DNA of 63,773 nucleotides, counting the filler, from Octopus bimaculoides (Eukaryota), in NCBI RefSeq assembly GCF_001194135.2. It is 6 parts of 5 records of this genome, joined end to end, with 100 filler letters (N's around TTAATTAATTAA, not from the genome) between each part and the next. Parts side by side here need not be neighbours in the genome. Positions count along the whole stretch, not along the records: positions 17,223 to 38,979 come from NC_068982.1; 5 more parts are not named here. One strand, given 5' to 3'. The translations under genes and the position numbers were made by a program. Below the pieces are notes generated by a model. That model was not told the origin of the DNA, searched no databases, and was given only the letters and a program-made list of their open reading frames with translations. This document shows positions 22,051 through 22,254 of this stretch, piece after piece; within the stretch, counting starts at the first letter, position 1; each line of letters starts with the position of its first letter.

Positions 22051-22254
22051 GTATTTGCATCGGGACATCTTTCGCATCGAAGATCGGTGATTGTCGTACG
22101 CTGAGGACGGGTAAATACCCAGAAACTCGAGTCCGTACGTATCACAGATCAAGATGGGAATGATGATTTCCCTTTGCAAATACAGACAGGACACAGATGT
22201 GTGTCAATAGCCAGCTGGAGGAGATGTTCTCCTGGGGCTAAAAGCAACAGTAAC
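22051..22254 (+). mobile_element. Retrozyme-like, highly structured non-coding element containing a hammerhead
   Basis: Enclosing 9-bp stem gtatttgca/tgcaaatac, several internal hairpins, tail cctggggctaaaagcaacagtaac. Confidence 0.6.
22082..22150 (+). ncRNA. Type I hammerhead ribozyme (predicted cleavage after C22133)
   Basis: Stem I CGTACG (22095-22100)/CGTACG (22134-22139), extended by GTGAT/ATCAC and GATC/GATC. Core CTGAGGA; stem II GGG TAAATA CCC; GAAA; palindromic stem III ACTCGAGT; GUC triplet. Confidence 0.85.

What the first reader, a model, noticed from the sequence alone, without database searches (positions are those of the whole stretch)
22051..22254. Near-canonical dimer-type hammerhead ribozyme inside a folded ~200-nt retrozyme-like element
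Seen in the sequence: every type I hammerhead element is in order. Stem I is CGUACG/CGUACG, extended across an internal loop by GUGAU/AUCAC and GAUC/GAUC. It is followed by CUGAGGA, stem II GGG-UAAAUA-CCC, GAAA, stem III inside the perfect palindrome ACUCGAGU, and a GUC cleavage triplet (cut after 22133). The flanks also pair: gtatttgca 22051-59 with tgcaaatac 22175-83, plus hairpins gggaa/ttccc, gacaca/tgtgtc and ggaga/tctcc. Established: loop II resembles the CAAAUA loop of the Schistosoma Sm-alpha hammerhead, and palindromic stem III is the hallmark of hammerheads that cleave as dimers in Penelope-like elements and metazoan non-LTR retrozymes. Inference: this is a copy of a self-cleaving, possibly circRNA-forming mobile RNA family; I know of no description of one in cephalopods. 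Caveat: the 10.1-11.1 pair is C.A, so this copy may be impaired.
Basis: partly seen in the sequence, partly recalled or inferred. Interest (0 to 1): 0.9.

Follow-up and report, generated by a model that had tools for sequence, protein, structure and literature searches.

The report
Hammerhead ribozyme repeat in octopus
This is one slightly damaged copy of a roughly 320-base mobile RNA element of octopus genomes that carries a self-cutting hammerhead ribozyme, a kind already known from corals, mussels and salamanders but not yet described for octopus.

Summary
It is a type I hammerhead at 22095-22139(+), with 6-bp helix I, CUGAGGA, 4-position helix II with a UAAAUA loop, GAAA, the palindrome ACUCGAGU and GUC (cut after 22133). 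Rfam gives only 19.9 bits (cut-off 34). A covariance model built from independent metagenome hammerheads of the same architecture scores it 43.1 bits; the next best hit in the piece is 10.8, and pattern-only chance matches score 17-30.

A second copy, 79% identical, was found in Octopus bimaculoides. It lies next to the 3' end of an upstream unit 350 nt away (tandem) and near head-to-head partial copies. Nine differences fall in 15 stem pairs and all 15 stay paired. The helix III palindrome changes symmetrically (UCGA to CCGG).

The element is 21986-22303 (318 nt), not 22051-22254. It is inserted in an old LINE endonuclease domain.

Best reading: a solo, probably impaired monomer of an octopod non-LTR retrozyme family, likely mobilised by Penelope-like elements. 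The 10.1-11.1 position is C.A here and A-U in the other copy.

This is a new member of a known kind. Cleavage and circular RNA are untested.

The parts
21986..22303 (+). Whole element copy (318 nt, 42% G+C, no ORF longer than 61 codons): a solo monomer of an octopod hammerhead-bearing repeat
   Evidence: Aligns with O. bimaculoides L048:1389-1699 at 79% over about 315 nt. The 5' junction with the LINE lies at 21985/21986. The circularised fold is -107.0 kcal/mol, z = -6.6.
22082..22150 (+). Hammerhead with its extended helix I: GAUC/GAUC, G.A mismatch, GUGAU/AUCAC, and a 3-nt/1-nt internal loop (loop 1: UGU opposite U22140)
   Evidence: Sequence. All 15 pairs are also standard pairs in the O. 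bimaculoides copy despite 9 differences. The loop-1 geometry and its uridines match 25 independent hammerheads.
22095..22139 (+). Type I hammerhead core. Helix I is 22095-100/22134-39. CUGAGGA is 22101-07. Helix II is 22108-11/22118-21 (10.1-11.1 = C.A), with loop 2 UAAAUA at 22112-17. GAAA is 22122-25.
   Evidence: Rfam RF00163 scores 19.9 bits over the full model. R1 scores 43.1 bits over 22088-22144.
22125..22132 (+). Helix III: A15.1-U16.1 and C15.2-G16.2 closed by the palindromic tetraloop UCGA. As the palindrome ACUCGAGU it can form an 8-bp intermolecular helix III between two copies.
   Evidence: Duplex energy is -10.7 kcal/mol. The O. bimaculoides copy has CCGG in place of UCGA, a symmetric change that keeps the palindrome.
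22133..22134 (+). Predicted self-cleavage site: GUC, cut between C22133 and C22134
   Evidence: Position follows from the hammerhead numbering. Cleavage was not tested.
22051..22183 (+). 133-nt imperfect hairpin whose tip is the hammerhead. The outer stem is GUAUUUGCA 22051-59 / UGCAAAUAC 22175-83.
   Evidence: Fold. Self-complementarity E = 1e-6. A stem forms at the same place in the O. bimaculoides copy (UUGCCAAG/CUUGGCAA, read).
22190..22288 (+). 3' branch of the element. Hairpins are GACACA/UGUGUC 22190-205, GGAGGA/UUCUCC 22217-232 and GCCGC/GUGGC 22273-88. This is the best-conserved part of the family.
   Evidence: The 22217-232 hairpin has G-C changed to A-U in the partial O. bimaculoides copies (GGAAAA...UUUUCC).
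22304..22321 (.). (TA)9 directly after the element's 3' end. It is either an AT-rich target or a TA-rich tail.
   Evidence: The 3' ends of the O. bimaculoides copies are TA-rich too.
20691..21985 (+). Context: 5' part of an old, frameshifted non-LTR (LINE) element. It holds an ORF1-like frame and the N-terminal half of the endonuclease domain, and is broken off by the insertion.
   Evidence: tblastn with P0123-P0125 covers 21615-21981. DNA homology to L046, L047 and L048 ends at 21979-21986. The paralogues continue with endonuclease sequence.
23397..24459 (+). Context: the same LINE resumes with the C-terminal endonuclease part, linker and reverse transcriptase. A mariner-type remnant cuts it off at about 24460.
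   Evidence: P0125 residues 158-183 align to 23422-23499 with score 48, above the null maximum of 38. RVT_1 covers 24070-24459.

Best explanation
Window 21986-22303 is one solo unit of a roughly 320-350-nt non-coding repeat family of octopod genomes. The family belongs to the class of metazoan 'non-LTR retrozymes': small non-autonomous retroelements built around a canonical type I hammerhead ribozyme.

**How the class works (established for coral, mussel and axolotl; inferred here).**
- Tandem units are transcribed by read-through.
- Each hammerhead cuts after its GUC. Cutting can be helped by pairing of the palindromic helix III between neighbouring units.
- The strongly self-paired RNA is copied back into DNA by the machinery of an autonomous element, most likely a Penelope-like element.

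**This copy.** It landed inside the endonuclease domain of an old LINE, in the same orientation as the LINE. It has a single ribozyme with a C.A mismatch in place of the G10.1-C11.1 pair. At most it could cut a read-through transcript once, between 22133 and 22134, and probably only poorly. It is best seen as a dead-end monomer.

**Shown:** motif, fold, family membership, compensatory evolution, and the insertion junction.

**Inferred:** cleavage, dimer action, the circular RNA, and mobilisation by a Penelope-like element.
For: **1. Canonical architecture.** The copy has a 6-bp helix I, a 3/1 internal loop with the conserved uridines, a 4-position helix II with a YAAAUA loop, and a 2-bp helix III with a palindromic tetraloop.
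- This is the same architecture as 25 distinct hammerheads from at least 6 families fished from metagenomes. Those show strong covariation.
- R1 scores it 43.1 bits, against 17-30 bits for pattern-only matches.

**2. It is a repeat family.**
- O. bimaculoides L048:1389-1699 is 79% identical over the whole unit, with the same 5' end.
- Its hammerhead scores 36.8 bits with R1.

**3. Retrozyme-like arrangement in L048.**
- The 3' end of an upstream unit lies 350 nt before the equivalent point of the full unit.
- The two units are joined by a 32-nt linker.
- There are also head-to-head 5'-truncated copies.

**4. Structural constraint.**
- Nine differences fall in 30 stem positions, yet 15 of 15 pairs are kept in both copies. 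By simulation P = 2.5e-5 to 9e-4.
- The helix III palindrome changes from UCGA to CCGG.
- The 22217-232 hairpin shows G-C changed to A-U in the partial copies.

**5. General retrozyme properties.**
- There is no ORF, and G+C is 42%.
- Circular folds have z = -6.6 and -6.2.
- These match the published properties of such elements (PMC7229834 and PMC7761336).

**6. Signs that fit mobilisation by a Penelope-like element.**
- The 3' flanks are TA-rich.
- The 32-nt linker is optional and resembles the 30-40-bp 'tail'.
- Inverted truncated copies are present.
- Unit ends are defined, with an uncut internal ribozyme.
- Sources: PMC8557442, PMC11167929 and bioRxiv 10.64898/2026.07.22.740005.

**7. Empty sites.** Paralogous LINE copies (L046, L047, L048; proteins P0123-P0125) run straight on into endonuclease sequence where the window switches to the element.
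Against: - There is only one hammerhead in the 21.7-kb piece, and no tandem partner.
- Rfam stays below its gathering score.
- C10.1.A11.1 replaces a pair that is G-C or G.U in 24 of 25 comparators.
- The secondary-structure MFE of the monomer (-23.8 kcal/mol) pairs part of the core. The active fold is -16.4 kcal/mol.
- Only one other ribozyme-bearing copy could be retrieved, and it is damaged too. It has a C15.2.C16.2 mismatch and a shifted loop 2, and Rfam does not see it.
- The upstream tandem unit in L048 is cut by an assembly gap, so a second ribozyme in the array is not seen.
- No Penelope-like reading frame is present in the piece or in the fetched octopod loci.
- Six-frame peptide searches for further copies found nothing.
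- No target-site duplication could be defined.
- No expression data are available.
Confidence: 0.75

Rival explanations
1. The element is a piece of the pseudo-LTR of an autonomous Penelope-like element rather than a separate non-autonomous retrozyme.
For: - Penelope-like elements carry hammerheads in their pseudo-LTRs. They form tandem and inverted partial copies with 30-40-bp tails and prefer AT-rich or microsatellite targets.
- Vertebrate retrozymes are reported to be related to pseudo-LTRs.
- Octopus genomes hold Penelope-like elements.
Against: - tblastn with a Poseidon RT/GIY-YIG protein finds nothing in the 21.7-kb piece or in L046-L051.
- The unit repeats at 350 nt, too short to hold a reading frame.
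- Metazoan Penelope-like hammerheads are mostly 'minimal' variants without helix III and with a bulged base before 10.1. This one is canonical.
Confidence: 0.08
2. It is a SINE-like retroposon carrying a hammerhead, like Schistosoma Sm-alpha. It would be transcribed from its own promoter and mobilised by a LINE. The ribozyme would not serve to make circles.
For: - Two independent copies share the same defined 5' and 3' ends, with the ribozyme internal and uncut.
- Both known copies lie near LINE sequences.
- Loop 2 and the overall ribozyme resemble the Sm-alpha motif (my knowledge of that sequence).
Against: - There is no tRNA-like part and no A/B boxes in a sensible order.
- There is no poly(A) or LINE-like tail.
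- A head-to-tail arrangement with a short linker, together with inverted truncated copies, is not typical of SINEs.
- The palindrome covaries, which points to selection for dimer pairing between adjacent units.
Confidence: 0.1
3. It is a chance hammerhead-like motif inside an ordinary structured repeat, and no ribozyme has ever been active here.
For: - Rfam is below threshold for the window copy and silent for the O. bimaculoides copy.
- Both copies deviate at positions that matter: 10.1-11.1 in the window copy and 15.2-16.2 in the other.
Against: - All 11 invariant core bases are kept in both copies despite 21% divergence.
- Lengths and loop geometry match independent hammerhead families exactly.
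- Compensatory changes occur in helix I, the closing stem and the palindrome.
- The pattern is found in 0 of 100 shuffles.
Confidence: 0.03
4. It is a ribozyme co-opted by the host, for example to process a transcript running through this locus, like the conserved intronic hammerheads of amniotes.
For: - The stems next to the core are perfect although the surrounding LINE is riddled with frameshifts.
- It has the same orientation as the LINE frames.
Against: - The locus is a nest of transposon debris, microsatellites and assembly gaps with no evident host gene.
- The 10.1-11.1 mismatch argues against maintained activity.
- No orthologous locus could be examined.
Confidence: 0.03

Closest known systems
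Metazoan non-LTR retrozymes (Cervera & de la Pena 2020, PMC7229834): Acropora millepora, Mytilus galloprovincialis, Ambystoma mexicanum
   Same: - Canonical type I hammerhead.
- Unit of a few hundred nt (here 318-350).
- G+C below 50%, with no ORF, LTR, PBS or PPT.
- Strongly self-paired predicted RNA.
- Tandem arrangement in the O. bimaculoides locus.
- Solo monomers scattered in the genome, as reported for vertebrates.
   Different: - Only about 1.2 tandem units are seen, because of an assembly gap.
- 10.1-11.1 is C.A or A-U instead of G-C.
- There are no expression or circularity data.
- The host lineage (Octopoda) has not been characterised for these elements.
Schistosoma mansoni Sm-alpha hammerhead / newt satellite 2 hammerhead (classical type I hammerheads, Rfam RF00163)
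   Same: - Same spacing throughout: 6-bp helix I with an asymmetric internal loop, 4-position helix II, a 6-nt NAAAUA loop 2, and a very short helix III with a palindromic loop, which allows double-hammerhead dimers.
- GUC cleavage triplet.
   Different: - Loop 2 is UAAAUA, not CAAAUA.
- Loop 1 is UGU/U, not UAC/U.
- Position 7 is G.
- Helix II is CGGG/CCCA with a mismatch at its base.
- The Rfam score of 19.9 is below the cut-off of 34.
Hammerheads of Penelope-like element pseudo-LTRs (Cervera & de la Pena 2014, PMC4209133; Frangieh et al. 2024, PMC11167929)
   Same: - Type I topology with a palindromic helix III region.
- Association with tandem and inverted partial copies.
- An optional linker of about 30-40 nt ('tail').
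- AT-rich flanks.
- The ribozyme is left uncut in inserted copies.
   Different: - No RT/GIY-YIG frame is nearby.
- The ribozyme is canonical rather than 'minimal'.
- The unit is only about 350 nt.
Coral-type hammerhead repeats in metagenomes Ga0126343 / ERZ1740055
   Same: Column-for-column the same 57-nt architecture. R1, built from these repeats, aligns the window copy without indels.
   Different: - There is no sequence similarity outside the conserved core.
- Their 10.1-11.1 pair is G-C or G.U in 24 of 25 sequences.
- They score 60-86 bits when intact, against 43 bits here.

Membership tests
Hammerhead ribozyme, type I (Rfam RF00163) | Conserved core C3-U4-G5-A6-N7-G8-A9 ... G12-A13-A14 ... 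A15.1-U16.1 and H17, in the type I order (helix I open) | tested here: met
   CUGAGGA is at 22101-07, GAAA at 22122-25, U22132 and C22133. All are also kept in the O. bimaculoides copy.
Hammerhead ribozyme, type I (Rfam RF00163) | Three helices of workable length around the core | tested here: met
   Helix I has 6 of 6 pairs. Helix II has 3 pairs plus one C.A. Helix III has 2 pairs plus a palindromic tetraloop. Helix I and the closing stem show compensatory changes.
Hammerhead ribozyme, type I (Rfam RF00163) | Score at or above the family's gathering threshold (34 bits) | tested here: not met
   The score is 19.9 bits, E = 0.006, in a 78-nt scan. There is no hit at gathering. The Rfam model does not score helix II and penalises the short helix III.
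Hammerhead ribozyme, type I (Rfam RF00163) | G10.1-C11.1 pair at the base of helix II (metal-binding site; my knowledge) | tested here: not met
   The window copy has C22108.A22121. The O. bimaculoides copy has A-U. Comparators have G-C 20, G.U 4 and A-U 1.
Hammerhead ribozyme, type I (Rfam RF00163) | Site-specific self-cleavage 3' of position 17 | not testable with these tools
   This needs in vitro transcription or end-mapping data.
Metazoan non-LTR retrozyme | Type I hammerhead inside a short (about 150-450 bp) non-coding repeat of low G+C, without LTR, PBS or PPT | tested here: met
   The unit is 318 nt in the window and 350 nt in L048. G+C is 42-44%. The longest open stretch is 61 codons. 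The family is confirmed by a second copy.
Metazoan non-LTR retrozyme | Head-to-tail tandem copies, each with a ribozyme | tested here: inconclusive
   The window has a single unit. In L048, the 3' end of an upstream unit abuts a full unit at 350-nt periodicity. The upstream ribozyme lies in an N gap.
Metazoan non-LTR retrozyme | RNA predicted to be highly self-paired | tested here: met
   z = -6.5 for the linear 204 nt. z = -6.6 and -6.2 for the circular units.
Metazoan non-LTR retrozyme | Expressed as linear and circular monomer RNAs | not testable with these tools
   No cephalopod transcript data are reachable.
Penelope-like element (pseudo-LTR hammerhead) | Adjacent RT plus GIY-YIG reading frame | tested here: not met
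   tblastn with the Poseidon_Ac protein gives no hit in the piece or in L046-L051.
Penelope-like element (pseudo-LTR hammerhead) | Minimal hammerhead lacking helix III, with an extra base between A9 and 10.1 | tested here: not met
   The spacing is canonical, and R1 aligns the copy without indels.
Sm-alpha-like SINE | Internal pol III promoter (A and B boxes) or a tRNA-like head | tested here: not met
   ARAGORN finds nothing. Only weak box-like matches turn up, and in the wrong order.

The most novel reading that the evidence does not exclude
Octopods harbour a still-active retrozyme family, mobilised by Penelope-like elements, that produces abundant small circular RNAs. Its hammerheads work with a non-G 10.1 position (A-U in one copy). 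The family has escaped annotation because its copies fall below the Rfam threshold. The window copy would be one fossil of it. The 32-nt optional linker would be direct genomic evidence tying animal retrozymes to the Penelope-like 'tail' mechanism.
Probability: 0.25. Interest if true: 0.55.

Novelty: new member of a known kind. Interest (0 to 1): 0.42.

Why it matters
- **Reach of the class.** It extends hammerhead retrozymes to octopods. These genomes are repeat-rich and heavily studied for RNA biology. Hammerheads have so far appeared there only as a count in an Rfam table for the giant squid.
- **Annotation gap.** Both octopus copies are missed at Rfam's gathering score, so standard annotation undercounts such elements.
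- **Evidence from two copies.** The pair gives unusually clean evidence: five pairs changed on both sides, one of them in the helix III palindrome. This supports dimer pairing as a selected feature.
- **Link to Penelope-like elements.** The optional 32-nt linker, the TA-rich flanks and the inverted truncated copies add circumstantial support to the recent proposal that animal retrozymes ride on Penelope-like elements.
- **The locus itself.** It is most likely inert.

Tried and rejected
1. **Peptide trick for other copies.**
   - Four open frames across the element were searched against the 5.8-billion protein index.
   - One frame was run exhaustively against 1.84 billion representatives.
   - Nothing turned up beyond two spurious hits in giant proteins. 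This is weak evidence, since such short frames are rarely called as genes.
2. **Family-specific DNA patterns.** Searches of metagenome, viral and prokaryotic collections gave 0 hits. These collections hold little or no cephalopod DNA.
3. **Target-site duplication.**
   - Only two 7-mers were found, which is what chance gives.
   - My interim idea was that TATATAC at 22044-50 and 23391-97 bracket the insert, with the element starting at 22051. The O. bimaculoides alignment refuted it: 21986-22050 belongs to the element.
4. **Penelope-like frames.** None were found near either copy.
5. **Wider sampling.** Two loci of ERZ25073829 turned out not to be octopod, since they share no SINEs with the window. 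One Argonauta locus held no copy.
6. **Looking up a window ORF to find the source record.** The ORF is not on record.
7. **Pfam on the LINE fragments.** Only RVT_1 matched, just below its cut-off. The endonuclease part had to be shown with homologues instead.
8. **Alternative register for helix II.** I considered a bulged C108 with G109-C120 as 10.1-11.1. I rejected it because it leaves A121 inserted before G12, and the independent model aligns the copy without indels.
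Full report
**1. The observation**

Read 5' to 3' on the + strand:
- GAUC 22082-85, G86, GUGAU 22087-91, UGU 22092-94
- helix I CGUACG 22095-100
- CUGAGGA 22101-07
- C108, GGG 109-111, UAAAUA 112-117, CCC 118-120, A121
- GAAA 122-125
- the palindrome ACUCGAGU 125-132, which contains A15.1-U16.1 and C15.2-G16.2 around the tetraloop UCGA
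- C17 = 22133
- CGUACG 134-139, U140, AUCAC 141-145, A146, GAUC 147-150

The outer stem 22051-59/22175-83 and the hairpins at 22190-205 and 22217-232 are present. The 204 nt fold at -81.3 kcal/mol, with z = -6.5 against dinucleotide shuffles. The core pattern occurs once in the window and in none of 100 shuffles.

**2. Is it a hammerhead?**

Rfam gives no hit at gathering thresholds in the whole piece. In a 78-nt scan, Hammerhead_1 (RF00163) matches 22095-22139 over its full length at 19.9 bits, E = 0.006. The gathering score is 34. The match was not reported in a 401-nt scan, where it may have been lost to the filters.

Rfam's model skips helix II, so I built an independent test.
- **Fishing pattern.** It fixed only the universal core, the AAAUA of loop 2, the C15.2/G16.2 pair and the spacing.
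- **What it found.** It returned 44 metagenome loci. They carry at least six distinct hammerhead families.
- **Shared features not in the pattern.** All have a 6-bp helix I, a 4-bp closing stem, an internal loop of three bases (U-R-Y) opposite a single U, and a paired 4-bp helix II.
- **Covariation.** It is strong: 94% of cells are paired, and 14 of 16 pairs show changes on both sides.
- **Model R1.** It was built from 25 of these sequences, without the window. It scores window 22088-22144(+) at 43.1 bits, E = 3.5e-11, full length and without indels. The next best hit in 21.7 kb is 10.8 bits.
- **Calibration.** The 19 pattern bases match by construction. Two chance matches to the same pattern score 17.2 bits (a phage coding region) and 29.9 bits. 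Decayed members score 42-58 and intact ones 60-86.

The window copy is therefore well above chance. It sits in the range of slightly damaged members.

Its one clear defect is C.A at 10.1-11.1. The comparators there have G-C (20), G.U (4) or A-U (1). G at position 7 is unusual but allowed (my knowledge).

On nearest-neighbour energies, the monomer prefers a fold that pairs CUGAG with part of the palindrome (-23.8 kcal/mol). The active secondary structure is at -16.4 kcal/mol. Two palindromes can form an 8-bp duplex of -10.7 kcal/mol.

**3. Surroundings**

The element lies in a nest of repeats.
- **Upstream.** There is the 5' part of a LINE: an ORF1-like frame at 20739-21245, then the start of an endonuclease domain from 21615 with several frameshifts.
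- **Homologues.** They include Octopus bimaculoides LOC106873154 (P0125, Exo_endo_phos) at 64% identity.
- **Where the endonuclease stops and resumes.** Homology runs to 21981 (...NEFYR, residue 114 of P0125). It resumes at 23422-23499 (residues 158-183, score 48, null maximum 38).
- **Downstream.** Linker and RT follow (RVT_1). A mariner-type remnant cuts them off at about 24460.
- **The interruption.** The LINE is broken by about 1.4 kb. This holds the hammerhead element, (TA)9, a 63% inverted-repeat foldback (22419-22571/22738-22893), (CA)n, a 359-N gap and (AT)20.
- **Empty sites.** Paralogous LINE copies continue with endonuclease sequence at the junction.
- **Negative checks.** No Penelope-like frame and no tRNA are present in the piece.

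**4. A second copy**

Fetching the genomic locus of P0125 gave L048 (O. bimaculoides GCA_001194135.2, CM046626.1:8507759-8528469).
- **Match.** R1 finds a hammerhead at L048:1492-1548 at 36.8 bits. BLASTN aligns window 21985-22298 with L048:1389-1699 at 79% identity.
- **Corrected boundaries.** The element is 21986-22303 (318 nt). The LINE/element junction is at 21985/21986.
- **Tandem context.** The 3' end of an upstream unit (1287-1358, cut by an N gap) lies 350 nt before the equivalent point of the full unit. A 32-nt linker (1359-1390), absent from the window copy, joins the two. This is a head-to-tail arrangement.
- **Partial copies.** Two 5'-truncated copies lie head to head at 2318-2504(-) and 2480-2605(+).
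- **Host.** The window shares SINE copies with L048 at 82-88%, so it comes from an octopod.
- **Wider sampling.** Further loci held no copy: two from ERZ25073829 (not octopod) and one from Argonauta.

**5. Comparison of the two ribozymes**

- **Core.** All invariant core bases are kept.
- **Stems.**

| Stem | Change, window to O. bimaculoides | Pairing |
|---|---|---|
| Closing stem | 3 of 5 pairs changed on both sides (G-C/A-U/U-A to A-U/G-C/C-G) | kept |
| Helix I | U-A to G.U | kept |
| GAUC stem | A-U to G.U | kept |

- **Test.** In all, 9 differences fall in 30 stem positions, and 15 of 15 pairs are standard in both copies. Random placement of 9 substitutions achieves this with P = 2.5e-5 to 9e-4, depending on transition bias.
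- **Helix III.** The tetraloop changes from UCGA to CCGG. This symmetric double change keeps the palindrome. It corresponds to U-A becoming C-G in a dimeric helix III.
- **3' hairpin.** Hairpin 22217-232 shows G-C changed to A-U in the partial copies.
- **Damage.** Each copy has its own: C.A at 10.1-11.1 in the window (A-U in L048), and C15.2.C16.2 plus a shifted loop 2 in L048. Rfam does not see the L048 ribozyme at all.
- **Circular folds.** The window monomer (318 nt) folds at -107.0 kcal/mol, z = -6.6. The reconstructed 349-nt L048 unit folds at -110.9, z = -6.2. Both have the same layout: a long stem running from helix I into a multi-hairpin branch.

**6. What it is and how it probably works**

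The features match the metazoan non-LTR retrozymes of Cervera and de la Pena (PMC7229834, PMC7761336).
- These are short, low-G+C, non-coding units with a canonical type I hammerhead.
- They occur in tandem and are expressed as self-paired linear and circular RNAs.
- A host ligase circularises them after self-cleavage.
- A short palindromic helix III makes cleavage depend partly on dimers (PMC4209133).
- Solo monomers are common and are regarded as dead ends (bioRxiv 10.64898/2026.07.22.740005).

Several details fit mobilisation by Penelope-like elements:
- defined unit ends with the ribozyme left uncut
- TA-rich 3' flanks
- an optional linker of about 30-40 nt, like the 'tail'
- inverted truncated copies (PMC8557442; PMC11167929)

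These details are circumstantial. No autonomous partner was seen.

The window copy has a single ribozyme with a mismatch at a position that is almost never C. It is most likely inactive or weak, and it cannot give a circle on its own.

**7. Rivals**

- **Pseudo-LTR fragment of an autonomous Penelope-like element.** No reading frame is nearby, the unit is only 350 nt, and the motif is canonical rather than minimal.
- **Sm-alpha-like SINE.** No pol III boxes and no LINE-type tail are present.
- **Chance motif.** This is excluded by core conservation and the compensatory changes.
- **Co-opted host ribozyme.** There is no gene context and the core is damaged.

**8. Novelty**

- Type I hammerheads and retrozymes are well known in animals, molluscs (a mussel) included.
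- For cephalopods, I found only a count of 235 Rfam 'hammerhead 1' hits in the giant squid genome paper (PMC6962438). Searches for a described cephalopod family found none. The library is limited to open-access papers and preprints.
- This is therefore a new member of a known kind. It has some methodological interest because both octopus copies escape Rfam thresholds.
- Cleavage, dimer dependence, circular RNA and copy number remain to be measured.

Noticed in passing
window 22419-22571 and 22738-22893: An inverted repeat (63% over about 155 nt). Its arms combine TCTG/TG- or CA-type microsatellite with a 'ttgtttttaacaaagaaac'-like motif. It is a foldback or MITE-like structure inside the same LINE interruption as the hammerhead element.
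   Followed up: partly
window 27071-27927; 35647-35818; 19930-19988; 25376-25434; 28883-28941; 35740-35798: SINE-like units sharing a 'GGTCAACTTTGCCTTTCATCC' core. Several stand side by side at 203-250-nt spacing (27071-27927), with an inverted copy at 35647-35818. They match O. bimaculoides L048:9419-9553 at 82-88%, which places the window in an octopod.
   Followed up: partly
window 24469-24827: C-terminal remnant of a mariner/Tc1-type transposase (QDGVTAHTA...WPSRFPDLTSSDFF, by eye). It sits directly after the LINE reverse transcriptase breaks off at about 24460. Pfam gave no hit on the short frames.
   Followed up: partly
window 17223-17612 (-): An open frame with a C2H2 zinc-finger-like motif (CKLCCRTFATERGLKIHQ), cut off by the edge of the piece. 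It has no Pfam hit.
   Followed up: no
window 33424-33502 and 35822-35900: A 79-nt direct repeat at 90% identity, 2.4 kb apart. Its nature is unknown.
   Followed up: no
window 38337-38979: A minisatellite of TACGTACG/TATGTATGGATG-type units running to the end of the piece.
   Followed up: no
L048:1359-1390 (O. bimaculoides): A 32-nt linker between two tandem units of the hammerhead element. It is absent from the solo window copy and contains GTTACTGTT, complementary to AACAGTAAC inside the unit. It resembles the optional 30-40-bp 'tail' of Penelope-like insertions.
   Followed up: partly
L004, L022, L025, L034 (inverted pairs); L003, L043 (direct repeats): The metagenome comparator hammerheads (Ga0126343, ERZ1740055) occur as inverted pairs about 230-460 nt apart, and as direct repeats 260 and 515 nt apart. 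This suggests both retrozyme-like and Penelope-like arrangements in those unidentified hosts.
   Followed up: no
window 22095-22139 and L048:1492-1548: Both octopus hammerheads fall below the Rfam gathering score: 19.9 bits for the window copy and no hit for the other. Rfam-based counts of cephalopod hammerheads would therefore miss this family.
   Followed up: yes
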